DNA of 48,714 bases from Bugula neritina (Eukaryota > Animalia > Bryozoa). This document shows positions 1 through 42,670 of the stretch, in pieces (the first letter of the stretch is position 1; each line of letters opens with the position of its first letter). Position numbers and translations under genes: made by a program. The stretch covers positions 1 through 48,714 of the forward strand of contig CAXIUT010000229.1 in the NCBI GenBank assembly GCA_964035545.1, written 5' to 3'. The notes under the pieces were generated by a model. The model searched no databases. It worked only from the letters and a program-made list of their open reading frames with translations, and had not been told where the DNA came from.

Positions 1-75
1 CCCAACCCCAACCCCAACCCAACCCCAACCCCAACCCCAACCCCAACCCCAACCCCAACCCCAACCCCAACCCCA
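1..75 (+). repeat. Left telomere (CCCCAA)n
   Basis: About 12 C4A2 units starting at base 1 with CCCAA; one C3 variant. Tetrahymena-type telomere repeat. Confidence 0.98.
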
Positions 76-4154: not shown

Positions 4155-4830
4155 ATGGATAACTAACCTGTTCCTGTTAAACTTGTTATTGTTGGTGATG
4201 GAGCCATCGGAAAAACTTGTATACTTGTCAGGTACTACTTCATTTCATACAGTTTTGTTTAAAACAGATTTCCTAAAGACTACGAGCCTACCGTCTTTGA
4301 CAATCTTACCACCACCATCAAGATCGACGGAAAGATCATTAACCTAGGATTGTGGTAAAAATAATATTAGCTAGGGATACAGCTGGTCAGGAAGAGTTTG
4401 GACGATTGCGACCTCTTGCTTATCCAGGTACAGATGTCTTCCTGATTGCCTTTTCTGTTGTTGATCCTTCATCTTTTACCAATGCTAGAAAAAAAGTACA
4501 TCCTCATCTATCTAGTGGTACCCAGAAATTCAAAATGTGGTTCCTGCTGCAGTCAAAATATTTGTAGGAAATAAAGTAGATCTCAGATAAACTGCTGCCA
4601 AAAATGCAAAAGATCCAAAGTCAGCACCAATAGCCAAAGATACAGCTAAAGGAGTAATTGAAGGATAGCTAAAATGCAAATATCTGGAATGCAGTGCTTT
4701 AACACGAGATGGATTGAGATAAGTCTTTGAGGAATCAGTGCGAGAAGTTCTCAGAAGAAAAGCTGGAGGAAGAAGTGAAAAAGGAATGAAAAATAAAGAT
4801 GGATCCAGTTGTAACTGTCAATTGATTTGA
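4155..4830 (+). CDS. Rho/Rac-family small GTPase
   Basis: [43 protein letters not shown], CaaX box CQLI; introns 4232-4252, 4355-4374, 4496-4515; 205 codons. Confidence 0.95.
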
Positions 4831-12371: not shown

Positions 12372-12438
12372 TTGGGGTTGGGGGTTGGGGTTGGGGTTGG
12401 GGTTGGGGTTGGGGGTTGGGGTTGGGGTTGGGGTTGGG
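12372..12438 (+). repeat. Internal telomeric tract 1, (GGGGTT)n
   Basis: About 11 units, two G5 variants, ends TTGGG. Confidence 0.97.
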
Positions 12439-13163
12439 TAATTCTCCTTTCAACTCTTGTGCTATCTCAGCAGTATTCATACTAGGACAAAAAGCTGCAT
12501 TATTAACTTCAATCAGGAGAAGTGATTACATTTTTTTGGCTTTAATCTGGATACTATCTTTTCGGAAATTCATTTCCAGATGAATATAAGAATAAGCTTC
12601 GTAACCTTTCCTATCCCTGGACAATGGTGAGAGAATGCGAGATGCTTGTAAAGAAAACATAGTAATAAATAGGTAGAAAATTTCATATAAGTGTCATTAC
12701 TGATCAAGTGGATCTATGTCGAACTTGCTATCTTTATCATTATGGAGGAACTATTGCTGATCTAGACTACGATATCAACTACACAAGACATCTTTAGCTC
12801 ATCAAAGAACATGATGTTTTCTTTTCAACTAGGTATGGAACTATTGATAGTTTTTATGTTTTTGTCAAATAAAAAAGGAGTCCTTTGATGCTATAGGTAC
12901 TCAAACGTTGGGATGATACTCTTTACCTGTTTGGAGATTCACCTCATGATATCATTAAGTATCGAGTGCATTTGTTACCGGATGATTCTGAACATCATCA
13001 GAGAATAAATACCTGGCATTCTTCATATATCATCAAACGACAGTGGAAATATATTGTGATTTTGCTGTTGATCTTATCGTTTTCAGTGTACCTTTTGAGG
13101 AAGTGGTACAAAGGTACAAAAACAAACCAGAATTATGATATGGTTGACAGAGTGACTGATTGA
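12439..13163 (+). CDS. 5'-truncated DxD glycosyltransferase (GT32/OCH1-like) with C-terminal transmembrane helix
   Basis: Frame is open from the junction (ILLSTLVLSQQY, the tail of a signal peptide, no ATG); DQVDLCRTCYLYHYGGTIADLDY matches the GT32 D..R...LY..GG...D.D motif; TGA at 13161-13163. Confidence 0.75.
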
Positions 13164-13451
13164 TTTGTCGTTTGAACATATTTATCCATCTTATTCAATA
13201 TTATCTTAATTGTCTATTTATCAAAATGACCTGCTTGAATGTTGGTGGTCAGATTTAATGACTCTTTATTTGAATTATCAGAAATATCAAATATGCTAAT
13301 TTGAATTTAAATGATTTATTGGCAAACAACTTTCTTGTTTTTGATTGTAGATGAAGAAATAAGTCTCATTAGAGTGTTTTTGTATGCTTTATTTTTTTTT
13401 TGAGATTTGCTTAAATACTCCCACCAATTAATAATATATACGCATTCATCG

Positions 13452-16400
13452 ATGGAGTAAAAAATCTAAAAAATATTTTGTTACTTTAAAAGTATCAAAA
13501 ACGAACCTTTCTACACCAGCTGCATTAGTCAACTAGTCGAAATATACTAACTTAACCCTTCAGCTCTCAAATTCCTTTTATATAATCTAAACCAACTCAT
13601 ATTTGCCAATTGCAAAGAACCTAGACTAAGGTTAAAGCACAGACTCATCGCTGCCAGTCTTGTGCAAAAACTAAACAACATCTATACAAGGAGAACAGAA
13701 TAATTTATGAAATAAGATGCCAATTTTTAACTTTAGCATTTCCAAATTGACACAGTTGGTAACTTTAATGTCAAAGAGCCAACTCCCAACTGGGAAGAAA
13801 TCGATCTCTTCAAGATCATAGAAAGTCAACCTCTGCTATTTTCAACCAAAGGAAACGATTTCGCTGCTAATCCGAATGAACATTAAGAAGAAAAGAAAAT
13901 CTTTGATGAATTTCTCGATATGAATCATGCAACTATGCTCAATATCGAGAGTTCATTCAAAGATATTTCATCAACTAGTCAGGCTACAGAGGAAGTAATT
14001 AAAAATTAAGGCCTAAAATACAAAAATAAAATTGAAAAAATCAATAGAAAAGCACAGGAAGAGCTTGGAAGCATAGAAATAACCATCAGCAATCCTTTTA
14101 ACCTGATGTTTTAGATCTGTGTCAACAATCTATTGAACACAGAGTGGGAACTGAGGCATCTTTCAGTGCTCATAATCAAGGAGCTCTTTAGCCACTCAGA
14201 ATTTTTGGGATTTTCTGAGTGTTTTAGGCTGAGTCCTAATGATAGCAGAGAAAGTCGTTTCGCCAATATTGCCACTATCACTCGATAAGGTTTAAGGATG
14301 CATTTAGAGAACTCAAAAAAGAAGAAAGATCTCATAAATGAGATTATTTATAAGAATATGATTCTTCTTAGTTTGGATCGTTTTGCTGACTATCAGACAG
14401 ACGAAAGTATTATTCTGGTTCGCATGATTTCTGCAGATATTTTAGCACAGGCTGTTCTAACTTTAGAAAGTAGACAGCATACTATTTTACTAAAGATGTT
14501 AAAAAGATTATTTGACCATGATACACCTTTCAACAAACAAAACCAAAAGATAACTTGGTAGGTAAAACATTCCTTTCTTTATTTTTTGACGATCCTGATC
14601 AAGTTGGATCCATCATTTAGCAAGCCTCTTTGTTCAACTCTTGAGTAAAGTTTTATCAAAATGCTTGCAAATGATCAAATAGACGAAATAATTCTCTGCA
14701 TTTGTAAAATAATAGAACATTTTATTGGACAAACCTTTTTTAGTACTCAAAAAATAGAGAGAATGAATAGACAGATATGGGCTATAGTTTAAAATTTGGA
14801 TGATTTGAGTACATCAGCCAAAGAAACTCTTAGTTTGCTTATTAAACTTTTTCCATATTTTAAACTTAATGAAGGCAATTGTCTTGATAGGTTGAAGAAA
14901 TTCTTTATTAGTAAAATTCAGTAAGTAAGAGGAGAACTATACAGACTAACTACATCATTATACTAAAGAAAAAAACCCATTTAAGATAGCAAAATCGTTG
15001 AAAGAAACTTAGTTCAATTACTACAAGGGTCAATCATATAATCAACTTAGTAAAATTTCAGAGCAATAGGTGAAGTGATGCCTGAGATTCATCCTTACAT
15101 AATAAAGTCAAAGAATGTTCGTAAGTTGGTAGAATTTATAAATCTTTGTGTGACTCCTCATCAATATAGCGAGTAGATAGTGAATTCTAAATTTTTAATG
15201 AGTATCTAGAAATAAAAAAGCTAATATATTTCTAATGAGTATATGTATATCATAGAGCATTAAAATGTACATGCTCCGATCAATTCTTACATCGATAAAA
15301 GAATTTGGAAAGTCGGAATGGTTTTGAAGGAACTATTTAGAGTGTCGAGTGATGGGCTAGAAGAGTTAATTAGAGGAATTGCAAAAAATAACTAAAAAAA
15401 TCATAGAGGAAAAATACTTATCTTCAATATCCTTATATAATTATTGCCTAAATACAAAAAGGCCAAAATATTCGAGGAGCATAAAGAGATGGCAATCAAA
15501 ATTATTAATCTTTAATACAATGAATTCACAGACAACTAAATTCAAAAAATATATATACCTGCGATTTAAAAACAACTGGCAAATATTTTAACCATTAAAT
15601 AATATGAAATAGCTTAAAATAATGAAGCTTTAGCTACTATCAAAGAGACAGCATAGATGTTCAGTAAAAATGAATCAAATGGTTTGAAAAATAGTTTAAT
15701 AATTGCTAAAAAACTTGATGCTTTCTACAAATCTTAGTTGAAGCCTGTTTTTCTGGGAGAAATAGAGTTATTGCTTAAGATGTTCAACAATGTAATGAAA
15801 ATTCAAAGATAACTAATGAGAAATGTAAAAATAGTAGCTTTGAACTATTTTATTCAATATATCTTTCCTAACTAGGTTCAAAATAATCTTAACATCATTA
15901 TCAAATGTATTATGGACTCAATCGTAGAGGACGGATATCAATTCATAAGTGAGGCTACAGCTGATGCAGCAGTCGGATTATCAAGAATATTAAAAGATAA
16001 AAAGAAATTAGTCTATACTAAATTTAATAGCAATCTTTGTTTAAATGTATCGAACAATTATAAGTTATCGTAGTTGAATCTTAAAGAAAGAGGCGAGATA
16101 ATGTTATAGGGGAGATATATGGGTGCTATGTGCCTTTACATAGAAAAGATGGGCAAGCTGCTTCCATAGTATTTGAAAGATAGTTGGAAATACTATCTTT
16201 AGATAGATGATAAAAAAAATGTCCATGAAGAACATCTTCGATTATTAACTCTTCTAAGTGGCACTATAAATTCTATTTTAAGTATCGATAAGCATCCTAT
16301 TGATGGCTAGTTATTATTTATTGATAAATTTACAAAGAAAACGAATGATATAATTGAAAAAAACAAGGTAGAAAATGAGTTTAGCTAATCAATTAATATA

Positions 16401-18432
16401 AAGTTGAAGAGTATTCTTGAAAGTGTAGCTTTGTTTTGCAGTAGTAGTTATAGATAGATGCCAAAAGTGTCAAATATATTTTTCTAGTGGTTTCTTGCAT
16501 AGCTATAGGCATAAAATATATTGATTTATGAGGTATTAGAGAAGGCATGTGCTGATAACATAGTATAGATCGCTCCTATTTGTTCTTTATTCATTCTGAA
16601 TATAATAAAGTCGATAACTAAGATAAATCTACATGATTTGGCAATGAACAGTCTTTCCAATATCATCGTTGGAGTGTATACCAATATAACTAAGATATAG
16701 TTGAGTCCTTCTTTGCAAAAAGTATCTGATTAAGGAGTTGAATTTATCAAAAACTTTAAAAATACTTCTAATTTTAATTATCCAGTTGACGTTAGGTATA
16801 AACAAGATATAGTTTTGAGAGAGTATCAGATGGAAGGCATAAACTGGTTGGGTTTTTTGACTCGATATAATTTGAGTGGAGCTCTTTGCGATGATATGGG
16901 TCTTGGTAAAACTTTGCAAACTCTTACAGTTGTCTAAAACTAGTATCTGAAATGTGATAATAAAGACTATTTGCATAGTTTGATAGTCTGTCCGAATACA
17001 TTGATGCAGCATTGGGCTTTTGAGTACCAAAAGTATTTTTAAAACCCTTTGTGTGAGCTTGTGATAATCGACAATAAGAAAAAATTTGGATAGATATAGA
17101 AGTATGAAAATTCAAAGAAGCCTATTATTTTTATAACTGGTTATGGCGTAGTATAAAAGAATGACTGTTTGTTTGATAAGATACATTTCAAGTTTATCAT
17201 ATTGGATGAAGGTCATCTGATTAAAAATACTAAAACGCATAAGTTTAAGGCTATTAAAAAAATAAAAGGCTTGCATAGATTTATACTAACTGGAACTCCC
17301 ATTCAAAATAAACTCATCTAACTGTGGGGTCTTTTTGATTTCTTAATGCCTGGCTATCTATACACCGAATAACTCTTCAGAAAACATTACTAAAAACTAT
17401 TTAGTGTTAACTTGACTACTTTCAAAGAAGATGAGCTTCTTTTTTCAGACTAACAAAGAAAAACCTTATAAAAATTGCATTATAAAGTGATGCCGTTTAT
17501 TATGCGTCGCATGAAGACTGAAGTGCTGAAAGAACTACCTGAAAAGATAATAAACGACCAAGCATGTGAACTAACACCTTGTCAGTTAAAGCACTATTCT
17601 GACCTTTAGTAGCGTATTAGATTTCAAACTTAAAATAAGACGCTAAATCCATTAAAGAATTTACGTGATATGATCGATATAGTGAACCATCCTTATTTGG
17701 GAGATTTGGTTAGTCAGATTCATTGGGAAGATTCTGGCAAATTTATAGCATTAGGATAGATATTTTAGAACATAGGATTGACTGAAGAATAGTCAGTGTC
17801 ACAAAATAAAGTAATTATTTTATTATTTAGGTCATTATCTTTGCTAGATAAAAAGCCACTGTAGATTTAATTTAAAAATACATCAAGTAGGTTTTTGGAC
17901 ATATCAAATATTTAAAACTCACCTCAGATGTCAAAGAATCTTAACGTTTCGTTGTTGCCCAAATCTTCAATGGAGATAGCGATATAAAAGTAATATTATT
18001 TTTATTTAGATTTTAGTAGTTACTAAGGCTATTGGGGGTGTTGGTCTCAATCTCACATCAGCTAATGTGGTTATCATGTTTGATAGCGACTACAATCCAA
18101 CAATAGACATGCAGGCGATCGATAGAGCCCATCGCATTGGTCAAAGAAGAGTTCTGAATGTTTACCGTTTGATAACTAAGAATACTCTTGAGTAGAAGAT
18201 AATGGGAATTCAACAATTTAAGGTGAATATTGCTAATGCGATAGTAAATATTGATAATTCTTCAATAAAAAACATCAAAGAAAGCAAATTACCAGATCTA
18301 TTGGAAAACATCAACGATTTAGTCAAAACTAAGAAGAACTAAGAGAAGATTAGCCATACTATGTATGGAGCACTGGTAGCTGAAATGGAAAATAATAGTA
18401 TAGAGCCTTAATAGTTTATGAAAAGATATTGA
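13452..18432 (+). CDS. BTAF1: Mot1/BTAF1 TBP-associated Snf2-family ATPase
   Basis: [71 protein letters not shown]; 20-nt introns 17811-17830 and 17990-18009; 1647 codons. Confidence 0.9.
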
Positions 18433-18534: not shown

Positions 18535-19518
18535 TCATTTGAGCTAGAGGGATAGTTCAATGGGACAATGGTCGCTTCCCATGATGTCGTTATTGATTTG
18601 AGAATCTTTGACATCAACTATTGATTTATCATTGATAAGGAAATAGTCGAGTCTCCAACCGATGTTTTTAGCTCTTCCGCCTGTTCTCATGCTCCACCAT
18701 GAATATTTGACAGTTTAAGGATAAAACTTTCTAAAGGTATCGACCCATCCTGTTTCTAAAAACTTGGTAAAGCTTTATCTTTCTTCAATAGTAAATCCAG
18801 CTGTTTTTTAGTTGCCTTTAGGCCTGGCAATATCAATTTCTTTATGACATACATTGAGGTCTCCACAAATGATGACAGTTTTCTTTTTTCTGAGTTAATT
18901 ACAATAATCTTGAAAACATTTATCATAGTCTCCTACTCGATAGCTGAGTCTATCAAGTTTTTGTCCTGAATTGGGAATGTAAGCTGTTATTAAATAAAAT
19001 TTTTAAAACTATACAGTAATAACTCTTCCTTCTTGTGAATGCTACTTTTGAGGTAAATCTTCTGAACTTGAAATAGGTAGATATTTTGAAAAGATAGCTG
19101 TACCTGAGTATCCTGCAGAAGTTTTACAAAAATTCCAATACCCATGATAGCCTGGTATCTTTATTGGATCTTTAGAGTAGGTAGCATGGTCGATTTTTGT
19201 TTCATTCAAACAAAATATATCAGGTTTCACTTTCTATAAATAACCTTGCAGATCTTGTCTATTTAACACAGCCCGGATTCCATTGACGTTCCATGATGAT
19301 ATTAGAAGTTTGTTTGGAGTTACTCCACTGCCATACTACCATAGAGATGAATGATTTTGATTTGAAAAGTTGACTGAGTTGACGTTGAATTGTTTTCCTT
19401 TGGACTTGGCTCCTTTTGATGACTACTCAGCAACTGACCCTGAGGATACTAGTTTGGTTTGTTTTAGAGCTTTACTGGGTTATTTTTAAGCTTTCTGAGC
19501 TTATTTTTTTGGAGGCAT
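18535..19518 (-). CDS. APEX1: AP endonuclease / exonuclease III
   Basis: SWNVNG, CLNETK, GYSGTA, QEGRVI, YIPNSG, GDLNV, GWRLDYF, GSDHCP; intronless, 328 codons. Confidence 0.95.
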
Positions 19519-19643
19519 TTTATTATAAGATTTAGCAAGATATGAACGCATTTGAATGACAAGATGACATTTATTGAGAGATGTTATTTTATTGCATTGA
19601 AGCAGATATTTAGCAATCATATGAATTATAATTAATTGGGGTA

Positions 19644-22328
19644 ATGTCTAAAAAATACTATGTTCTTTATTCTCTCTCTTAATTCTTTTTGCCTAGAATC
19701 TTTAAAACTAAAACCACCATCAATAAATACCTACGGTAAAACAGAAATCTCACCTATAAACCTTTCTACTCATCACAACAAGCTAATATCTTTGCCAAAT
19801 CCATCGAAGAATAATTACAGGAAAAGTATGTTAGAAATATTTAAAAAGATCATAATTAGGATCCTTAGTATGGTAAAAAACCTTTCTATCCCTACGATAT
19901 TTTTATGAAGACTAGTATAGAAGTAGAAAAGAAATAAGAATAAAGATATAAGGAAATTGATATCAACAACCAAGTTGAAAAAAATTAAATTAAAGAAGAA
20001 AAATAATAAATCAATCAAATGAGTAATATAAAACATGAAGAATAAATAATAGAAAATCCATAAGGAAAAGAATCAAGTGAAAATGTAGAAGTAAAAGAAG
20101 TAAGTTAGAATATAACAATTGAAGAAGTCATTGATCAAAAAGAAGTAAAAGAAGAAGTTATTGATAATATAGAAAGTCAGAAAGAATAAATCTTAAATGT
20201 TTTAGGAGAATAAATAGGTAATAATAAGGAAGTAAAAGAAGAAGTAAGTGATAAAATAGAAGTAAAAGAAGAAGTAAGTGATAACATAGAAGTAAAAGAA
20301 GAAGTAAGTGATAACATAGAAGTAAAAGAATAAGTAAGTGATAGCATAGAAGTAAAAGAATAAGTAAGTGATAACATAGAAGTAAAAGAATAAGTAAGTG
20401 ATAAAATAGATGTAAAAGAATAAGTAAGTGATAGCATAGAAGTAAAAGAATAAGTAAGTGATAAAATAGAAGTAAAAGAATAAGTAAGTGATAAAATAGA
20501 AGTAAAAGAATAAGTAAGTGATAACATAGAAGTAAAAGAATAAGTAAGTGATAACATAGAAGTAAAAGAATAAGTAAGTGATAAAATAGAAGTAAAAGAA
20601 TAAGTAAGTGATAACATAGAAGTAAAAGAATAAGTAAGTGATAACATAGAAGTAAAAGAATAAGTAAGTGATAAAATAGAAGTAAAAGAATAAGTAAGTG
20701 ATAAAATAGAAGTAAAAGAATAAGTAAGTGATAAAATAGAAGTAAAAGAATAAGTAAGTGATAACATAGAAGTAAAAGAATAAGTAAGTGATAACATAGA
20801 AGTAAAAGAATAAGTAAGTGATAACATAGAAGTAAAAGAATAAGTAAGTGATAACATAGAAGTAAAAGAATAAGTAAGTGATAGCATAGAAGTAAAAGAA
20901 TAAATAAGCGAAAATATTATAGTTGCAGAATAAGAGTAAGAAGCAGCTTTTAAAGTTTAAAAAGAAAAACATTTTTAGATGAAAACTGAGGATATTTCAA
21001 TAGAAAGTATTGATAATTAAGCGGATTTTAGTTTAAAAGTGTAAGATGAATAATAGTATAGTAAAAAGTAGCTTTTGGAAGCTCTTTAAAGCAATGTTAG
21101 AAAAGTTGAATCGTAAATGTATTCAAAGAATAAAAGATAAGAAAAGAATAAAATAGCAGAATAGTAAAAATAAAAATAAAAATAACTAACATTTGGAGAA
21201 TAAGAGAAATTTAAAGAGCAAATTAATTAAAAATAAGTCTAAGAATAGAAGTCAAACAAAAATTAAATATTAATTGAAGATAAATAATTAACAAAAGAAG
21301 TTAAATAATATAAAGTTTAAATATTAAGTTAAAATATTAAAAATAAAGAAAATGATGAAGAAATAATGATAAATCCAATAAATTAAGAAATAAGTCCAAT
21401 ATCAATAGTTGATATTATTCAATAGTAAGCAATACAAAAATAAGAAGTAATAGTTAAGGCAGTATCTTCATAACCATTATTTGAAGTTATTTAAGAATAA
21501 AAAGGAGAAAAAGAAGAAATATTAGAATAGTTACTAGTTAAATAGTCAATAGTTGAAGTTATTGAAGAATAAAATATCGAAAAATACTAAAAAATAGTAA
21601 ATCAATAGCCAATAGTTTAAGTTAATCAATAAAAAGTATAATAAGAAGAAATAGTAGTGAAGATAGAAGCTTCATAGTCAATAGTTGAGACTATTTAAGA
21701 ATAAAAAATAGAATAAGCTATCTAAGAACAAATTTAAACAGTTTAAAGTATAATATTCGATTCAAATAAAAACTAAAATATCAATATATCTCATAAAGAA
21801 CATCAATAGGATCTTTAAAAATAAATTAATCCTGAAGTAAAAGAATAATAAGAAAATAATATAAAAATATAAGAACTATAATTAATTTAATCACCTTCAT
21901 AGACATAAATAATGCAATATAATCCTTTGCTATCATCTAATTCAATCAATTTGAACTCTCTTCACTTATATTCCAAATTTTTATAACTAAATTCTCAATA
22001 CCCATAAGAATAATAGGCTAATTTAACAATAAACCTCACTCAAAATCAAAATCCAGGCATATCAGTCGCATAATACCATCTTTAGACTACTAGTACATCG
22101 ATTCATAAGATAAAATTGTTAGGAGTCCATAATAAGGCAAATTCTTTGGTTCTTAGTTTGTTTTCAGGTTTGAAATTGGCATCTGAATATAAGATAAGAT
22201 CACTTCGAGTGAAATCAGATATGGGCAATAGAAAAAGGTTTTAAAAATCAATAGATAAAAATCTAAAGAAGATGATATAGCCTTATAGTGAACTTTAGTT
22301 ATAGTTTAATAATATAAAATACATGTGA
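19644..22328 (+). CDS. 894-aa acidic repeat protein with RNase H1 hybrid-binding-like N-terminus and degenerate RNase HI-like C-terminus
   Basis: ATG 19644 and TGA 22326 are in the same frame. N-terminus KKYYVL...IFKT...LTYKPFYSSQQANIF; C-terminus NQNPG...LG...SLFSGLKLASEYKIRSLRVKSD. Domain calls are by eye. Confidence 0.7.
20229..20903 (+). repeat. Coding 30-bp tandem repeat, about 22.5 copies, EVKEEVSD(N/K/S)I
   Basis: Unit GAAGTAAAAGAA(G/T)AAGTAAGTGATAACATA, in frame with ATG 19644. Confidence 0.95.
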
Positions 22329-22338
22329 TTGTTTACTA

Positions 22339-23076
22339 TCATTGTTTCTTTAATATCTAAAATGGATTTATATCTCTCTCTTCCTGTTATTTTGATAACA
22401 TCTTCTCTTTCATCTTTTATAGAGTTTGCTGTGACATCTTTTCTTTTGTTTCTTATTTTGTTTTATTTACAGGTTCTTTAGCTTTAGTCTGTTCTTTAGT
22501 TTTAGTCTCTTATTTTGTTTTTGTCGGTTATTTAGTTTTATTTGTCGGTTATTTAGTTTTATTTGCAGGTTATTTAGTTTTGTTTGTAGTTTACTTTGTT
22601 TTATTAGTTGTTTATTTATTTTTGATTATTTATTTGGGTTTGATTTTGTTTGATTTCTTTTTTTTATCAATTTTATTACCCCATTTTATTTTTTATTGAT
22701 CTGTTAAAGCTTTCCATAAATTCTTTATCTTCTTATTACGTTATTTATCGCATAAATCTAAATAATTTATCTATTTACTTTTATTTTATTAGAGAAATGT
22801 TGAACTTTTTATTTTACTTTTAACAAAATTTTTAAGTCCGAGTTTTATTTGTTTTTTCTTTTACTAACTTAGTTCCATCTTCTTATCTTTAGTATCTTTC
22901 TTTATCATTTTGCTTTTATTCTATTTTTTTGGCAATGAATATTATTAAGCCAATTGAAACTGTGTTTGATTATGTGATATCTTCTTGAAGAATATATTCA
23001 TTGTATTTATTAATTCTGTCATCTGAGTTATTGTAGTTAGTACGAAGTATTTGGTGGAGTTGGCGGGGATTTTCAT
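22339..23076 (-). CDS. Basic protein with HMG-box-like motif and 21-bp repeats (TNKTKEP)
   Basis: 246 codons ATG to TGA; KKIKNLWKALTDQEKIKW resembles HMG-box helices 2-3; repeats near 22510-22610. Confidence 0.6.
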
Positions 23077-23143
23077 TTGATCTTTAATTAATAATTATAA
23101 AAAGTTGATAATTATTTATACTATCATTTAATTCTTGTTTCTG

Positions 23144-23878
23144 ATGGTAGATAGATACAAATCATATATCAATAGTTAGATCCACTAACCTCTCGATCCA
23201 TCTCTACCTAAACCTGCATACAACAAATAACTACTTCAAAGAGTTAACAATCATACTACAAGAATGAGATAACATATAAATAAGTATAAAAGAAATATAA
23301 ACAATGATACTAATCTTATAATAAATGATTTTAAGAGTTAGCAGGTAATGTTGGTTCGAGATCGGAAGTTGATGCAGTAGTAGTTGGATATTTTGTAGAG
23401 GTAGGGGAAATAGAATAAGCCTGAATATAATTTTGTGAAGAAGTAGTTGTTGAAAGCAGTTAAGAATGAGATTAATTTGTAGTTGTAGCTGAACCAGGAA
23501 ATAACTAAACAAAAATAGAATAAATAAAGAATTAAAGCACAATTACAACTATCGTCACCTCAAATAGCCAATGCAGTCAAAGATATATAAGCTAAATTAC
23601 AAGATATACTCTATCTAGAACAACAAATCAACTAGTGCGTTCAACTATTGTAAATAATCGGAGTGCTTACACATGCAAACGGGTAGAAAATAGACTAGAT
23701 AAGCTAGAGAGTAAGAAATGCCAATCAAAATATCGAAAGAGCTGAGGCCAATATCGATAAAGCCAAAATAGCTATGTAGAGGAGTAGATGTAGAATGTGT
23801 TGTATAATATTGTTGGCTCTAGTAGTAATAGCTATTTTAGTAGGAGTGCTATTTGGATTTAACGTTTTTGGTTTATGA
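23144..23878 (+). CDS. Syntaxin-like Qa-SNARE
   Basis: SNARE motif DIEAKLQDILYLEQQINE...NGEKIDEI followed by a C-terminal transmembrane helix; 245 codons. Confidence 0.8.
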
Positions 23879-28813: not shown

Positions 28814-30898
28814 ATGAACAAGTAGGCGGTGTTATTGCTGGTAGATGTGGGTTCTTCTATGGACTAGCCATTCAACGACTCGTCTTCTCGGGCTAAGATA
28901 GCTTTGTAGTGTTGCAAGTTGACTCTCCAACAAAAAATATTCAACAATTCCAGTCATGAATTGGGATTGGTTATTTTTGGAGATAATGATTCTGATGATG
29001 GCAACAGCTTATACCTTCAAGAACTGAGTAAACCTAATATCTAGTTTGTCCGTAAGGTTTAAAAGCTAAGTCATGCTAACTTTGATAATATTTCCCAAGG
29101 AGGCGATATATTTAGTTGCATTAACTTTTCATTGACCACTATGAACGACCACTGCGGTAAGAAAAAGTATAATAAGAGGATGTTTATATTTACTAATGGA
29201 GCTGGAAAATCAGCATTTACTAAAGACTAGCTGCAAAGACTGGCTAGAAAAATCAAACAGCTTTAAATCAAACTTAACATCATCCCCATCGACTTCATGG
29301 TCACTTATAATGCAGAAAACAACGAACTTGACGGATAACACCTTTTGGATAAAAAACAATAAGATAATGCCCAAATGATTATGCACTTGAAGTCGTTGGC
29401 TGAGGATTATATTCAAATCTTTCCTGCTTCATTGGCTATTGAGTTGTACAAACGTTTTAGGAAAAGAGATACTAATCCTGTTGCCAAATTTAGGGGTAGT
29501 TTGTAGTTTGCCCCAGGATTGGATATCTAGGTTTGTTGCTACAAAGCTGTTCGCAGGTAAAAATTGAAATCATTAGCTAGATATGATACGTCTGTACCCT
29601 TTGATCCCATCATCCACAAAGAAAAATAAATCATCAACGAAACAAACTATGTTATTCAAGGCGACTAGACAGGAAAGCTAATCGACAAGGATAATATCAT
29701 TAATGCATATTATTATGGACCTCAATTGGTGCCGATTAGTCCTATACTGGAGGCAGGCAGTAAGGTTTTTTAGGACAAGAATTTAAGATTGTTAGGATTT
29801 GTGGAGAAAAGCAAAATACCTCGACATGCTTTTCTCAGCGAGATCGATATAGTGGTGCCATCTACAGATAATATTGTTGGTAGAAAATTATTCACTGCTT
29901 TTATCTATTCCATGTTATCACTTAATAAATATGCCTTGGCGAGATATGTTCCTAGAAATTACAAGAACGGAGTCACACCCAAAATGGTTGTCCTGATTCC
30001 TTATAGATCAACAGAAAAAGAAATGTTTTACTTGGTTTAGCTGCCCACTGTAGAAGACGTAAGACAGTACCCTTTTAACTCTATGAAACAGTCATCTGCA
30101 TAGCAAAAATAACTAGTTAAAAACTTGATTAGTAAGATGAGGATGGATTAAGGAGAAGAGTAAACAAAAGTAGAAAATACATTTAATCCACAAATACAGT
30201 ATTTTTATCAATCTATTTTTTATAGAGCTATTGGCAACAACTAAGATTTGCCTCCTCTTGATCCTGTTATTAAAAATTATATCGCCCCATAAAATAAAAA
30301 ATACTAAGCTTCTGCAGCTTTAATGCCAGATCTAAAGAAACAGTTCAAGCTAGTAAAGAAGAAGATCAAAGTAGACCCAAAGGAGAAACAAAAGGCTGTA
30401 ATTTGGAAAGATGTGCTTGAAGAATTAAGTCAACCGAAAGAAGAGGAGATGATGAAAGAAGAAGAGATTTAGCATGAATATGTAAAACCAGCACATAAAT
30501 TTGCTTTTGAGTAGTAAGAAGACGAAATGGGCTTTAATCCATCGAATCCAGTGATATCTTTCAAAAAGATGGTGGCCTTTAATAAAGAAGATCTTGTCTT
30601 AAAAGCTCTTAAAGAAATGGATAAGTATATCCTGAACAAGTTGGCCTTTTCTGTTACTGGAGAGGCTTTTCAACACTTGAGTTAGTGCGCACTAGCTTTG
30701 AGGAAGGCTTGTATCAGTGAGCAGGAGGAGAAGTTTTGGGATGATTGGTTTGTTGAGATGGGACGTAAGGAAAGTAACTTTTACAAACATATGAAATCTG
30801 AAGGCTTGGGACTTATTAGAGGAGGAAATGTAGAAGTGTTTAAAGCATAGGTATTGCACCATGAAGAAATTGATGACGCGTTGTTGGACCTTGATTGA
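28814..30898 (+). CDS. XRCC5: Ku80 DNA end-binding protein
   Basis: MNKEAVLLLVDVGSSM vWA start, AYYYGPQLVP, LRLLGF, ALARYV, LPTVEDVRQYPF, NTFNP, acidic tail EEIDDALLDLD; intronless, 695 codons. Confidence 0.92.
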
Positions 30899-36411: not shown

Positions 36412-36509
36412 TATTATTGACTAATTGAGTATATATAATTATATCAATGATAAACGATATGTTTTTATTTATAAGTCATAAATAAATGGTTGATATATTG
36501 ACTTTTAAA

Positions 36510-36584
36510 GGGGTTGGGGTTGGGGTTGGGGTTGGGGTTGGGGTTGGGGTTGGGGTTGGGGTTGGGGTTGGGGTTGGGGTTGGG
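36510..36584 (+). repeat. Internal telomeric tract 2, (GGGGTT)n
   Basis: 75 nt of perfect repeat, ends TTGGG. Confidence 0.97.
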
Positions 36585-39500
36585 AGCATGTGAGGAAGGC
36601 TATTTTCTTTTTATGAATTTTAAATAGCTTTATTGGAACTATTATCACTCCAATGCTTGAATTATTATTCATTCTTACTAAATATTTACTATGAATCTCC
36701 TATAAACTTATTTAATAATTCATGTGCTGATTATTTTTATTATTCGATCTTATGTTTGCTACCTTTTCTAGAATCTTTCATTCCTTCCATCTTCCGAATT
36801 TGTTATTCATCTTGATCGTATTTTTTATCACTATAGTCATCTTACCCCTTGCCATCATCATGTTTCATAGCTGGACACCATCCTTTAGTCCTAATATCAG
36901 ATACAGTCAAATAGATTAACCATGTAATACATACAGCTAATGTGATAGTAATCAAAGAGATGCATAGTATAGCCATGTTATGTGATCCTTGAGTGGAAAG
37001 AACATCAAGTCCTAGAATGATTAAGCAGATAATATAAAGAGTGAGAGACGATTACATGAAGATGGTAATATAGTCTGTCATTTGGTTGTCGAATGGCTGG
37101 TAGAAGTATATGCAGATCATAATAAGAAAAGTAAGAACTAAAAGTAAACTCATCGTTGATATTGGTTAGAAAGGAGCTATTCCTAAACCTATCGCTAATA
37201 CTATCCTTCTTATATGGCCAAAAGGAGTGTACATTAAACCTACTTTACTTTAAGTTCTCTCAAAATCACCCAATAAACCTGATAACTCACTCAATCTTTT
37301 TACTTGTATTATTTTGTAGGAAATCCAAGCGACATAAGATATTGCTATTATGAGAATAATTATATTGATGAAGAGTACTCCTGGTTTTTGGTTGTAGAAT
37401 TGGCAAGCAAAAAGGAGTAGAGGTACCATGCAGATGGAAAAGAGATCATTGATCAGTCTATATCGAATATTGCGGACTAATCTCGGACAATGTTATGGTT
37501 TGTAGGTGTGAGCGATGATGATGGAGATGAAGGTAATAAGAAAGCCGATAAAGATGAGGAAGACCAGGAGTTGGTTTCTAAAGATGAGTGAATCTGTACT
37601 ATAGAAGATGAATTTGGGAGCAGAAAAGGTAAAAGGGACTGAGTTAACCATATTTTTTGTGAAAGCCAAAAGTGCAAATTTACATCCAGCTAGAAAGTGT
37701 TAAAGAATGGGAGGATACTGGATGTCGAGATAGAGAGTGACTGCTACGAGTTGAAAGTAGTCTAGAAGTTGTATAAATCTGCTGCTTTTATTGATCATAT
37801 TGATGATTATAAGAGCAAGCAGTAGTACAAAGACGATGATGGGGATAAAGGCAACAAACTGGTTAGATTTGTATTATTTGTAATTTTTATAGAGGTCTAG
37901 TTCTTTTTTAAATTTATTTTTGGATATTTTTTGTGGAGAGGATTGGCTTTGTAGATAGGGGATAGTGAGGGAAATATTGACCAGACTAACTTCTGTGTGA
38001 TCCAGCTTAAGTTCTATTTTGTACTATGTGATCTAAGATTAGGTAAGAGTGTGATTAATTGAATTTCCTTCAATGTCTACAAAAGATATTTCGATGTCTG
38101 CTAGATTGGCTATCTATGATTGTTGGTTATAGTAGAGCATGAGAGTGAGTTCTTCTATGTAGAGAAGTTGAAGGTCACCAAGAAAGAGGCTGTTGCAGAG
38201 TCCACCAGAGTTTTAGCAAAGGATACACTCTTGTTGCTAGTTGACGTAGTAGTCATTGCTGCACTAATCTATACAATTGCCATTCAAACTAACCATTTTA
38301 TTTCCACAAATTCCAGTATAGCAAGTCATAGTAGCAGTATACTTATTGTATGGACATTGTGAGTTACAAGTATTGTTGTTGGGGTAATACCAGACATCAC
38401 TTGGACAACTTGTGACACAATAGTTGTGGAAATAGATGTAGCCAGTTAGACAGGTGGTACATGTAAAATCTCCTGTACAGTTATCACATGGACTTAGACA
38501 GGGATTGCATTGGGTGCCTGAGTTGGGATAGTATTGGGCTGGACAACTAGCAACACAGGCGTTATTGTGAAGATAGGTCCCAATGCAAGTAAGACAGTGA
38601 GTTGAGTTAGTACACGTGGCACAATTTGATCCGCATTGTGAACAACTACTATTATTGACTGCGTAGTAGAAGATAGGACAAGAAGATTGGCAAAGTCCAT
38701 TGAATTGAATCAAATTGTTATTGCATTAGACGCAAAAATCATATGCTGTACAGTTAGTACAATCTGACTGACAACTTTGGCACTAGTCATAGTTGGTGAT
38801 GGCTTGGGTGCCTTGGAAGAATCCCAAAGGGCAACTAGCAATACAAGTATTGTTCATGAGATAGTAGTTCGTTGTACACCAGGTGCAGACTGAGGAAGAG
38901 GTGCAAGTTTGGCAGGTTGATGGACAAGCTTGGCATGATGAACTGTTGTCAGGATAATAACCAACTGGACAACTAGAAAAGCATCTATTAGAAAAAAGGT
39001 AGTAGTTAGTGAGACAACTGCTACAGAAGGTATAGTTAAGACAGTTTCCACAAGGAAAAGGGCAACTATCACAGTTAGCTTTAACTGCATTTGCGTAGTA
39101 TCCATCTGGGCAGCTACTAGTACAGCTAGTATTGAAGAGATAGTAGTTAGTATTGCAAGTAAGGCAACCATTGGCTGATCCACTGCAGGTGACACAGATA
39201 GTTTGGTTACAGGACTAGCATGTATTAGTGGAGTTATCTTGGTAGTAAGAAGTGGAGCAAGTGGTAAGACATTGGTTGTTGAAGTAGAAATAACCTGAAA
39301 TGCATGAGATACAATTCGATGAAGAGGAGCAATTGGCGCATGGAGAGATGCAGGCATCACAAGTTTTAGAGTACTCGTTGCCGAAAGTGAGTGAAGGACA
39401 TGAAGATATGCAGGAGGAGGCGTTTAGGAAGAATCCTGATGAGCAAGTGAGACAGGTTGAAGAGGTAGAATTGCAGGTGAGACAGTTATTGGTACAACTT

Positions 39501-42376
39501 GCGCATTAGTTGGCAGTGGAGTTAAAGAAGGTGGCAGAGGGACAGGTGGTAACACATTGTTTGGAGTAGAGAATGCCAGTTTGGCAAGTAATACAAAGAT
39601 ATGCGTTATAGCATTTGCCGCATGGTGCCACACAGTTAGTACAAATTCTGGTTTGATCGTTACCGTAGTAGTTATCTGGACAAGTTTACGTGCATGTATT
39701 GTTAAGATTGTTTAAATACATACCTGATGAGCAGGTTGTGCAGTTGGTGCTAGTGGTCTGGCATGTATAGCAGTTGCTGTTGCAAGACTAGCAGTTGGTA
39801 GAGTTTGCTTGGAAGTATCCAGTTGGACAAGAAGACACACATTTAGATGTCGATGCAATAAACAAATAACTAGCAACGCATGAAGTGCAAGTAACTGAGT
39901 TGGTTTGGCAAGATTAGCAAGGGAAAGCACAGAGACTGCATTATGCACTTGTAGAATTGACAGCGTTGGGACTATAACTAGGATAGTATCCACTTTTGGC
40001 TTGACATTATACGAGAGTTATGCAAGTTTGATTGAAAATCAAATGGGGAAGCGAGCAGGTCAAACAGGCAGTATCTGAATGGCATGTCAAACAGGGACTA
40101 ATACACTCAGTACAGGTAAAATTTGTGTTAATGTAAGCAGTTGAATTGCATTATAGAGTACAAATAGAACCATCTAAGTAGCCAGTAGTGCAAGACAAGC
40201 AAGATGCATTATTGGTGCATGTTTTACATGGTGGAGTACAAGCAGTACAGGTATTATTGGCGCTATTGGCGAAAGTACCTGAAGGACAGGTAGATAGACA
40301 GGATCCAGCAGAGAGATAGGTTCCAGATTGGCAAGATGCGCAGGTAGTTGATCCGACACAGGTGAAACAGTTGGATTGGCAGGGCTGACAAGTGATATTG
40401 TTGGATGTAGAATAATCTGAGTAGAAGGTTGCTGGGCAGCTGTTAAGACACTGATTGTTATGAAGGACTCCTTTTGCGCAAGAAGTGCAATTGGTTTATA
40501 CTAAATCACAGCTTCTGCAGGGATAATGACAATCCAAGCATCGATTATTGACTGAATCAGTGTAGTATCCAGAAGGACAGATCGATAAGTTACTGCAGGT
40601 GGTATTAAGTAGTAGAAATCCAGCTGTGCAACCAGAACAAGTCGTACTGTTAATGTAACAAGCAGAACAGCTAGATGAACAGTTGGAACATTGGACTGTG
40701 CCATTGATAGAATTACCATATTGACCAGTTGGACATGAAAAGAGGCAGGAACCATCTTGGAAGAGATATCCAGCTGCACAAGAGAGACAAGTAACTGTGG
40801 AATTCGATATTTGGCAAGTGACGCAAGGATTGGGGCATATTTCACAGGTTCGAGTGGTTGAGTTAGGGAATAGTTTATTATCAGTGCAGGTCGATAGGCA
40901 TTGTCCATTTTAGAGGAAAAAGTTGGTGAGACAAGATAGGCAGAGAGTAGTGTTGGAGCAGGTTTCGCAGGGAGAGACGCAATCTTGGCAAGTATAGTTT
41001 GATGAAAGTCTGTAGGTTTTATCCGGGCAAGTAAGATGGCAAACTTGTCCATAGAGATAAAATCCACTATCGCATGAAGTCACACAGACATTTTGTTGTA
41101 AATAATAGGGTGAGAAACAAGCTGAACAATCTACTGATGAAGTGCATTGACTGCATTTGGATACTTGACATATTGAGTGTTAGAAAACTGCTTATACTAC
41201 TTGCATCATGCCAGAACTATCTGTAATAGTTATGTTGGTGGGATATTGACCTGCGCTGTATGTGAAGGTACCAGATATGATTGAATATCCGTATGGACAG
41301 TTGAGGCAAGAAGAGTCAGTTTAACTAAGGGCGAGTTATGGTGCAATATTGGTCGAAAGGGATTGAGTAGAGAGGACTGAGGAATTTTAGTTGATAAGAG
41401 AGATGCTTATTGTTCGAGCAGCTGTGGTTCCATAAAATTTGGAGGAGATATAGAAGAGGAGTTAGTAGTATGTTTGAGTCGTCGAGTAAGAGATAGTGAT
41501 GGTATTGGTTGTGGAGCAAGTTCCACTGCAAGTGAAAGATGAGATAGAGTGATGGATATATTACTTTGTTTTTGATGATCCTTGAGGTAGACATACTGAT
41601 ACTTGACTTCCAAATATGCTCTGCACTTCTGAATATGTTTGGCATCCATAGTTGCCAGTTATACAATCAGTATAGTACTGTCCATCTGCTTCAAGACAAA
41701 GCAGACTTCCTCCCTGTTTGCATGATCCGCTACTGAGATACTTTCCCTGGGTACAAGAAATACAAATTCCATTGACGCAGCTGGCACAGAAAGGATCGAT
41801 TGATGTGCAGCTGTAGGCTGTACAGGAGTTATTAGAAATGAAGTAACCTTGGTTGCATGAAGAGCAGAAGGTTGCATTGGTGCAAATTCTACAGTTATCT
41901 GAGCAAGAAAGACAAGATGTACTGTCTGATGAGAGATAGTAGGTGAGAGAACATGTAGAGCAGCTGATGAAATCGGAACAGGTTTTACAATTCGATAGAC
42001 AGCCAGCACAAATATTGTCCAGTAGAAAGAAGCCATCGCTACAAGTTTGAATGGTGGCAATAGTGCAGGTAGCTGCTCCATTTGGGCAGGCACTGCATTA
42101 TCCACTGGCTGTTAGATATAATCCATCTATACAGGTTGAGCAGGAAGTTGAATTAGCACATACTGAGCAACCGAAAGAGCACTTGAAGCATTGGTGGTTA
42201 TTGATATAGTGCTATGGTACACATTGAGTGCAGACATTGGAATCAAAGCATGTCAGACAAGTGACTCCACATGGTGCGCAAGTACCTGTATTGGGATCAG
42301 TGTATTTGTAAGAGAAGAGGCATTGTGGACTGATGATTACAAAGATAAGAGCGAAGAGGAGGGGAAGGTGTGTCAT
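36585..42376 (-). CDS. Giant Cys-rich (furin-like CxxC repeat) surface protein with multi-pass TM C-terminus, 3'-truncated
   Basis: Signal peptide MTHLPLLFALIFVII; dozens of CxxC repeats; hydrophobic helices near 36900-37860. The frame at the junction matches ATG 42376 (about 1930 aa) and enters the telomere tract with no TGA. Confidence 0.88.
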
Positions 42377-42588
42377 GATTTTAAATATAGAGTAAAGAAT
42401 TTAAATTTATACCTTTATTAACATTCTATCTTATTCCAGAAAGAAGTGATTTATAAAGAAGTTATTAAAGATTTTTGTTTACCTCAAAGCAATATTATGA
42501 TAAAATAAGTATCAAAATAAGAATATTTAATCTGATAAGTTATCAAAATAATGTTTAATAGTGTTATTTAAACATGATAGTATTTAAA

Positions 42589-42667
42589 GGTTGGGGTTGG
42601 GGTTGGGGTTGGGGTTGGGGTTGGGGTTGGGGTTGGGGTTGGGGTTGGGGTTGGGGTTGGGGTTGGG
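42589..42667 (+). repeat. Internal telomeric tract 3, (GGGGTT)n
   Basis: 79 nt of perfect repeat, ends TTGGG. Confidence 0.97.
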
Positions 42668-42670
42668 TCA

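What the first reader, a model, noticed from the sequence alone, without database searches (positions are those of the whole stretch)
19644..22328. Candidate pseudo-RNase H: hybrid-binding-like domain, ~700-aa acidic linker, apparently dead RNase HI fold
The N-terminus KKYYVLYSLSEFFLPRIFKTKTTINKYLRENRNLTYKPFYSSQQANIF follows the RNase H1 hybrid-binding (Cauli_VI) pattern K.YA......I..T.........YK.F.S..QA..F. The C-terminus LTINLTQNQNPGISVAEYHL...LGVHNKANSLVLSLFSGLKLASEYKIRSLRVKSD aligns by eye with archaeal/actinobacterial-type RNase HI (DG.SRGNPG...G..TNN.AEY..L..GL..A...G...L.V..DS). The first Asp and the Glu appear lost, and only the third acidic residue remains. Finding both remnants in the natural order supports the call. 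The normally short linker is expanded into a very acidic repeat region. Inference: a non-catalytic RNA:DNA-hybrid reader or nucleic-acid mimic, of interest in an organism with RNA-guided genome remodelling. It is invisible under the standard code.
Basis: inference. Interest (0 to 1): 0.75.

Follow-up and report, generated by a model that had tools for sequence, protein, structure and literature searches.

The report
Possible dead RNase H1 relative, ciliate
A real gene of a ciliate that travelled with a marine animal encodes a very acidic 894-residue protein. Its two small basic ends weakly but consistently resemble the two domains of RNase H1, without the catalytic residues, so it may be a non-cutting relative of that enzyme; this is not proven.

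Summary
The ORF is real. Positions 19644-22328 (+) hold 894 codons with no in-frame TGA, against about 12 expected. It carries 107 in-frame TAA/TAG codons, read as Glu in the peritrich code. Strain differences show purifying selection, strongest in the last 139 residues (dN/dS about 0.08).

The quoted peptide strings, the 695-residue acidic linker (pI 4.2) and a 30-bp x 23 repeat are all present.

No curated threshold is met. Pfam finds nothing on the stop-free pieces, and the six-frame genome scans for PF01693, PF00075 and PF13456 skip this locus.

- N-terminus against 374 hybrid-binding domains: HMMER E 1e-3, hhalign P 6e-4.
- N-terminus against the N-terminus of this ciliate's own genuine RNase H1 (contig C193): p about 2e-4, with a shared rare Gly-to-Arg change.
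- C-terminus against RVT_3-type RNase H: HMMER E 1.5e-3, hhalign P 2e-4.

The catalytic set would be N, no Glu, D, with the last helix missing. A similarly strong but clearly false HBD match in the neighbouring APE1 gene shows how fragile such evidence is. No orthologues, no RNA data and no whole-domain fold could be obtained.

Verdict: partly supported, about 45% that it is an RNase H1-derived pseudoenzyme. Interest is moderate.

The parts
19644..22328 (+). Single-exon coding sequence, 894 codons plus TGA stop, read with the peritrich code (TAA/TAG = Glu)
   Evidence: 0 in-frame TGA against 11.9 expected; 14 synonymous and 14 non-synonymous strain differences, overall dN/dS about 0.28.
19644..19793 (+). 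N-terminal basic module (residues 1-50), hybrid-binding-domain-like
   Evidence: My HBD HMM aligns residues 17-50 at 5.5 bits, E 1.2e-3. hhalign gives P 6e-4. A 47-residue ungapped match to the N-terminus of the C193 RNase H1 has p about 2e-4. None of 2169 other windows reaches the score.
19824..21908 (+). Acidic low-complexity linker (residues 61-755; Glu 30%, pI 4.2, net charge -153)
   Evidence: Composition. Relaxed constraint in the part covered by strain data (residues 423-755): dN/dS about 0.47, not significant.
20207..20908 (+). 30-bp tandem repeat, 23.4 copies, 96% matches, encoding a 10-residue V-K-E-E-V-S-D-x-I-E unit (residues 188-422)
   Evidence: The first three units spell Glu-Glu as GAA GAA and the later ones as GAA TAA.
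21909..22325 (+). C-terminal basic domain (residues 756-894) under strong purifying selection
   Evidence: 7 synonymous against 2 non-synonymous differences, dN/dS about 0.08, binomial P 5e-4. pI 8.75.
22032..22220 (+). Weak RNase H-like core (residues 797-859): Asn797 in place of the first catalytic Asp, N-P-G at 803-805, helix-strand motif 835-859 ending in Asp859
   Evidence: RVT_3 HMM on residues 827-859: 5.4 bits, E 1.5e-3, 13 of 5000 shuffles reach it. hhalign on residues 803-859: score 27.9, P 2e-4; 0 of 400 shuffles and 0 of 377 real-ORF windows reach it. Residue numbers.
19519..19643 (.). About 125-bp divergent intergenic region between the likely start of the APE1-like gene (minus strand) and this gene
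   Evidence: Inference only; the start codons have not been mapped.

Best explanation
The gene encodes a highly diverged, non-catalytic relative of the ciliate's RNase H1. It has a basic N-terminal module of about 50 residues derived from the hybrid-binding domain (HBD). The linker, which is 40-115 residues in known RNase H1 enzymes, has grown to about 695 acidic residues, largely by amplification of a 10-residue repeat. The basic C-terminal domain would keep the first two thirds of the RNase H fold (strands beta1-beta4, helix A, perhaps a short helix and beta5). It has Asn for the first catalytic Asp, no catalytic Glu, keeps the third carboxylate (Asp859) and lacks the last helix with the fourth. 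Such a protein cannot perform two-metal RNA cleavage. If it still touches nucleic acid, it would act as a binder or scaffold rather than as an enzyme. Shown: the ORF is real, the C-terminal domain is under selection, the ends are basic and the middle acidic, and there are weak, register-consistent profile similarities. Inferred: common descent with RNase H1, the fold, and any binding of RNA:DNA hybrids.
For: Both ends match in the natural order and in the pre-stated register. For the N-terminus, the HBD HMM built from 374 instances gives E 1.2e-3 and hhalign gives P 6e-4, or 3e-4 by a Gumbel fit to the real-ORF null. The pairwise match to the N-terminus of the ciliate's own RNase H1 (C193, L013) is an ungapped 47-residue alignment scoring 49-51. 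Only 1 of 2000 shuffles and 0 of 2215 real-ORF windows reach it. The two proteins share Arg at the near-invariant Gly12 column (Arg in 1 of 374 HBDs) and a loop 3 residues longer. For the C-terminus, the RVT_3 HMM, which scores C193 at 83 bits, gives E 1.5e-3. hhalign gives P 2e-4 and probability 46% over N-P-G to Asp859, and no shuffle or real-ORF window comes near. Four different RNase H profiles place the helix-strand motif in the same register. The C-terminal domain has dN/dS about 0.08. The termini are basic and the linker acidic.
Against: Pfam finds nothing on the stop-free pieces, even at E 10. The six-frame genome scans with PF01693, PF00075 and PF13456 do not list this locus, although they find C193. 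PDB phmmer and the protein atlas give nothing for the 52-residue piece. The PF00075-type profiles give E 0.03-0.45. With HMMER, another, surely unrelated ORF of the window (23081-23875) scores higher against RVT_3, at 8.6 bits. The best pairwise alignment to the C193 RNase H domain is out of register and not significant. The candidate lacks the near-invariant HBD residues Gly8, Gly12 and Trp17. An unrelated APE1 segment matches HBDs at 11.8 bits. About 35 residues follow Asp859, against about 57 in the family.
Confidence: 0.45

Rival explanations
1. Both resemblances are chance. The gene encodes a lineage-specific acidic repeat protein (for example a chromatin, nucleolar or structural protein) with two small basic end domains of unknown fold, unrelated to RNase H1.
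For: No curated family hit. Each resemblance is only about 5 bits over 24-34 residues. Chance matches of this size occur in the same window: ORF 23081-23875 against RVT_3, and the APE1 segment against HBDs. The finding was selected by eye from thousands of ORFs. No orthologues were found.
Against: Two independent weak hits fall at the right ends, in the right order and in the pre-stated register, with a joint chance of roughly 1e-6 per ORF. There is also specific similarity to the N-terminus of the ciliate's own RNase H1, including a rare shared Gly-to-Arg change.
Confidence: 0.3
2. Only the N-terminal module is an HBD relative. The C-terminal domain is something else. This would be one more of the many HBD-carrying proteins that have no RNase H domain.
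For: The N-terminal evidence is stronger and comes from three tests. In the top HBD hits, 83 of 152 proteins show no RNase H domain with my profiles. The C-terminal signal depends on the profile used and is truncated.
Against: hhalign gives P 2e-4 for the C-terminus against RVT_3-type RNase H, which is the type of this ciliate's own enzyme.
Confidence: 0.2
3. The ORF is not a functional gene. It would be either an open frame kept by chance in A-rich repeat DNA or a decaying duplicate.
For: No RNA run was found, so expression is not shown. The repeat is free of TGA in one other forward frame as well.
Against: There are 0 in-frame TGA in 660 non-repeat codons against 11.9 expected. All other frames are closed outside the repeat. 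The excess of synonymous changes has P 9e-4 overall and 5e-4 in the C-terminal domain. The ORF exactly fills the gap between two flanking genes.
Confidence: 0.03

Closest known systems
Eukaryotic RNase H1 (HBD, linker, type-1 RNase H domain); here the ciliate's own copy on contig C193 (L013:1009-1908, 273 residues)
   Same: Same order of modules. Both N-termini begin M-S-K followed by aromatic residues. Both share a P-R-[IL]-[FY] motif and a [YK]-x-F ... A-x-x-F tail. The C-terminal N-P-G ... G-L-x-x-A ... V-x-S-D pattern is in register with RVT_3-type RNase H.
   Different: C193 scores 83 bits against RVT_3 and keeps all four catalytic residues; the candidate scores 5 bits and keeps one. The linker is about 695 residues against about 85. 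The last helix is absent. No curated model recognises the candidate.
Hybrid-binding domain family (Pfam PF01693, Cauli_VI), including caulimovirus viroplasmin and multi-HBD proteins without an RNase H domain
   Same: Residues 17-50 align to profile columns 11-44, keeping Pro11, Ile13, Phe14, Tyr32, Lys33, Phe35, Ser37, Ala41 and Phe44.
   Different: It lacks Gly8, Gly12 (Arg) and Trp17 (Lys), which are near-invariant in 374 instances, and has a loop 3 residues longer. The score is far below the Pfam cut-off of 21 bits.
Engineered catalytically dead RNase H1 (first-Asp-to-Asn mutants used as R-loop probes; from my own knowledge, not checked here)
   Same: If the alignment holds, the first carboxylate is Asn (Asn797), the classic change that abolishes cleavage while keeping the fold.
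   Different: The natural protein would also lack the Glu and the whole last helix, so even substrate binding is uncertain.

Membership tests
RNase H1 (type-1 RNase H with HBD) | RNase H domain recognised by a curated model (PF00075 or PF13456) above its cut-off | tested here: not met
   The genome-wide six-frame scans do not list the locus at E 10. The 52-residue stop-free piece gives no Pfam hit at E 10. My own RVT_3 profile gives 5.4 bits. The whole domain could not be given to Pfam, because a read-through translation has no reference.
RNase H1 (type-1 RNase H with HBD) | Four catalytic carboxylates (Asp-Glu-Asp-Asp) | tested here: not met
   In the profile alignments the first Asp is Asn797, the Glu falls on Leu/Ser or a gap near 835-836, the third is Asp859, and the region of the fourth is absent.
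RNase H1 (type-1 RNase H with HBD) | Complete five-stranded sheet with helices A to E | tested here: inconclusive
   The extended hhalign alignment ends at template column 106 of 127, so the last helix has no counterpart. No fold of the whole domain was possible. AlphaFold2 on the 52-residue piece gave one long helix, but so did the matching piece of a genuine RNase H.
RNase H1 (type-1 RNase H with HBD) | HBD at the N-terminus, catalytic domain at the C-terminus | tested here: met
   The weak matches lie at residues 17-50 and 797-859 of 894.
Hybrid-binding domain (PF01693) | Match to the curated model above 21 bits | tested here: not met
   There is no hit in the window in the six-frame scan and none on the 24-residue piece. 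My own 374-instance profile gives 5.5 bits, E 1.2e-3.
Hybrid-binding domain (PF01693) | Conserved core residues (Gly8, Gly12, Trp17, Lys33, Phe35, Ala41) | tested here: inconclusive
   Lys39, Phe41 and Ala47 are kept. Gly12 is Arg18 and Trp17 is Lys23. The ciliate's genuine RNase H1 shows the same Gly12-to-Arg change and also lacks the Trp.
Hybrid-binding domain (PF01693) | Binding of RNA:DNA hybrid | not testable with these tools
   This needs recombinant protein and a gel-shift or similar assay.
Peritrich nuclear code (NCBI table 30) | TAA and TAG at conserved Glu positions, TGA the only stop | tested here: met
   All six Glu in the RNase H domain of C193, including the invariant catalytic Glu, are TAA or TAG. 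There are three GAA/TAA polymorphisms in this ORF, and GAA and TAA interchange at one repeat position.

The most novel reading that the evidence does not exclude
A ciliate keeps, besides its working RNase H1, a selected non-catalytic copy. In that copy both nucleic-acid-binding modules survive at the ends of a roughly 700-residue polyacidic repeat spacer, giving a natural 'dead RNase H' that reads or scaffolds RNA:DNA hybrids or double-stranded RNA instead of cutting them.
Probability: 0.25. Interest if true: 0.55.

Novelty: new variant of a known kind. Interest (0 to 1): 0.35.

Why it matters
If the kinship holds, this would be a natural RNase H1-derived pseudoenzyme. I found no paper on RNase H1 hybrid-binding domains in ciliates, and a search for HBD/RNase H pseudoenzymes listed none among its ten top papers. 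It would come from a group of organisms whose genome biology depends on RNA-guided DNA processing, and it would have an unusually large acidic spacer. It would then offer a natural counterpart to the engineered dead RNase H probes used to map R-loops. If the kinship does not hold, this is an ordinary lineage-specific acidic repeat protein. In either case the locus shows that genes of this ciliate cannot be seen at all under the standard code.

Tried and rejected
- Pfam on the five stop-free pieces at E 10: nothing relevant.
- PDB sequence search and protein atlas with the 52-residue piece: nothing.
- Word search for relatives of that piece, metagenome scan, and own-genome protein and DNA searches: only the locus itself.
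- The word search with E. coli RNase HI gave only close relatives, which were of little use for a profile. The word search with the Olsenella-type HBD gave 3 hits because of the length window.
- HBD search in 301 actinobacterial genomes: 2 hits.
- Reads: all holders were DNA-like contigs from three studies under three host labels. There were no joints and no RNA, so expression and introns remain open.
- AlphaFold2 on the 52-residue piece gave one long helix at pLDDT 88. A control piece of a genuine RNase H (L106) gave the same, so the test is uninformative.
- phmmer of the N-terminus against HBD proteins gave a nominal E of 4e-4. I set this aside because 30 of 937 control windows reach E 0.01 and an APE1 segment reaches 9e-7.
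- Left out: Pfam, HHpred-type or structure prediction on the whole table-30 translation of either end. The read-through protein has no reference and the tools take no read-through by reference.

Full report
**Setting.** The window is a whole 48.7-kb contig (C238) of a 216-Mb assembly. The large contigs of that assembly carry standard-code retroelement ORFs. C238 is AT-rich and is capped by C4A2 and G4T2 repeats. Earlier notes of this scan describe such contigs as small chromosomes of a peritrich ciliate that travelled with a marine animal and that use TAA/TAG as Glu. I checked the code myself. The ciliate contig C193 carries a genuine RNase H1, and all six Glu of its catalytic domain, including the invariant catalytic Glu, are written TAA or TAG. 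In the ORF under study, three strain differences are GAA/TAA exchanges. One position of the tandem repeat is GAA in the first three units and TAA in the rest.

**The observation.** The frame has 107 TAA/TAG and no TGA. The other frames have 8-44 TGA, and shuffles of the non-repeat 1980 bases give 11.9 in-frame TGA on average and never zero. The ORF fills the space between an APE1-like gene and a Lys/Thr/Glu-rich repeat gene, both on the minus strand. A 30-bp unit repeated 23.4 times (20207-20908) encodes a 10-residue acidic unit. The linker (residues 61-755) has pI 4.2 and net charge -153. The first 60 and last 139 residues are basic.

**Is it a gene?** No RNA run was found. The stretch occurs as DNA-like contigs in three studies under three host labels, without joints. 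Differences between those strains and the window give 14 synonymous and 14 non-synonymous changes where 22% synonymous are expected. In the last 139 codons the counts are 7 against 2 (dN/dS about 0.08, P 5e-4). In the covered part of the linker the counts are 7 against 12, which is not significant. So the frame is coding, the C-terminal domain is constrained, and the linker is relaxed.

**Curated tests.** Six-frame scans of the whole assembly, reading through stops, with PF01693, PF00075 and PF13456 do not list this locus at E 10. They do find the host RNase H1 exons and the ciliate gene on C193. Pfam on the stop-free pieces gives nothing relevant, and PDB and atlas searches of the 52-residue piece give nothing.

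**My own profiles (built in scripts).**
- *N-terminus against an HBD profile.* I collected 374 HBD instances from 152 proteins found with a near-consensus bacterial HBD. None of 2169 equal-length windows from the other ORFs of the contig reaches that score. hhalign gives P 6e-4, and a Gumbel fit to 450 real-ORF windows gives 3e-4.
- *N-terminus against the ciliate's own RNase H1.* The N-terminus of the C193 enzyme scores even lower against the HBD profile (1.0 bit), so ciliate HBDs are diverged. Yet the candidate and C193 align without gaps over 47 residues from position 3, scoring 49-51. One of 2000 shuffles and none of 2215 real-ORF windows reach this, and the Gumbel estimate is 2e-4. Both proteins have Arg at the Gly12 column (Arg in 1 of 374 HBDs) and a loop 3 residues longer.
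- *C-terminus against RNase H profiles.* A profile of 30 actinobacterial RVT_3-type domains scores C193 at 83 bits. It scores the candidate at 5.4 bits, E 1.5e-3, over residues 827-859, and 13 of 5000 shuffles reach that score. hhalign against the pooled RVT_3 alignment gives score 27.9, P 2e-4 and probability 46% from N-P-G (803-805) to Asp859. The maximum of 400 shuffles is 20.7 and of 377 real-ORF windows 19.4, and the Gumbel estimate is 1.6e-4. Four profiles place the helix-strand motif in the same register, but the PF00075-type ones are weak or blank.
- *Catalytic residues.* In these alignments the first catalytic Asp is Asn797, the Glu is lost and Asp859 is kept. The ORF ends near strand beta5, so the last helix with the fourth Asp is missing.

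**Cautions.** With HMMER, another ORF of the contig (23081-23875) beats the candidate against RVT_3, at 8.6 bits. A segment of the neighbouring, certainly unrelated APE1 catalytic domain matches HBDs at 11.8 bits, and phmmer E-values are inflated in this composition. The C-terminal signal is mostly one motif of 24-33 residues. I tried several profiles, so about 1e-3 is the fair figure for each end. The ORF was chosen because of these resemblances. No orthologue or paralogue was found that could raise sensitivity. AlphaFold2 on the only foldable piece was uninformative, as a control from a genuine RNase H showed.

**Weighing.** Two roughly independent events of about 1e-3 fall at the right ends, in the right order and in a pre-stated register. 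There is also a specific likeness to the organism's own RNase H1 N-terminus. Against this stand a low prior for such a paralogue and the cautions above. I put descent from RNase H1 at about 45%, an HBD-only relationship at about 20%, pure chance at about 30%, and a non-gene at about 3%.

**Likely working (inference).** This would be a non-catalytic protein with two small basic modules that may hold duplex nucleic acid, separated by a very long acidic, repeat-expanded spacer. The Trp of the HBD binding face is missing, as it is in the ciliate's true enzyme, so hybrid specificity is doubtful. From my own knowledge, aromatic and lysine residues of the human HBD contact the hybrid (Nowotny and co-workers, 2008); I did not check this here. 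I found no paper that combines RNase H1, the hybrid-binding domain and ciliates. A search for HBD/RNase H pseudoenzymes listed none among its ten top papers, and the listed Drosophila RNase H1 paper gives a linker of 115 residues.

**Verdict.** If true, this is a new variant of a known kind, of moderate interest.

Noticed in passing
window 1-74, 12381-12439, 36510-36585, 42593-42668, 48633-48714: Besides the C4A2 and G4T2 caps at the two ends, the contig holds three internal G4T2 tracts of about 60-75 bp, all in the same orientation. These could be alternative chromosome ends, joined chromosomes or an assembly artefact.
   Followed up: partly
L013:1009-1908 (G000 contig C193, match 4423-4788): This is the genuine RNase H1 of the ciliate: 273 residues, with an HBD-like N-terminus, a linker and an RVT_3-type catalytic domain with all four catalytic residues. 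All six Glu of the domain, including the catalytic one, are TAA or TAG, which is direct proof of the Glu reassignment.
   Followed up: yes
window 13404-18080 (+), 18538-19518 (-), 28814-30895 (+): The neighbours on the same 24-kb segment are DNA-metabolism genes: an SNF2-family ATPase, an APE1/ExoIII-type endonuclease transcribed divergently from the candidate (about 125 bp apart), and a Ku70/80 protein (Pfam hits on stop-free pieces). This may be coincidence.
   Followed up: partly
window 19045-19233 (-): A segment of the APE1 catalytic domain (P-G-Y-H-G-Y-W ... S-G-T-A-I-F-S-K) gives a false 11.8-bit match to hybrid-binding domains. It is a useful warning about motif-level matches in this proteome.
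   Followed up: yes
window 20207-20908: Each 30-bp repeat unit contains GTAAGT...ATAG (16 nt), which looks like a tiny intron. Removing it would break the frame, and no spliced form was seen in the reads laid beside it. The first three units use GAA where the other units use TAA.
   Followed up: partly
window 22342-23235 (-), repeats 22444-22623: The convergent downstream gene ends 14 bp after the candidate's stop. It encodes a Lys/Thr/Glu-rich protein with an 18-21-bp tandem repeat (K-T-K-E-P-T-N-like units). It has no Pfam hit.
   Followed up: partly
window 36479-42511 (-): A 2011-codon cysteine-rich repeat ORF lies in the most GC-rich part of the contig (40-42% GC). It has a weak match to Giardia variant-specific surface protein repeats.
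   Followed up: no
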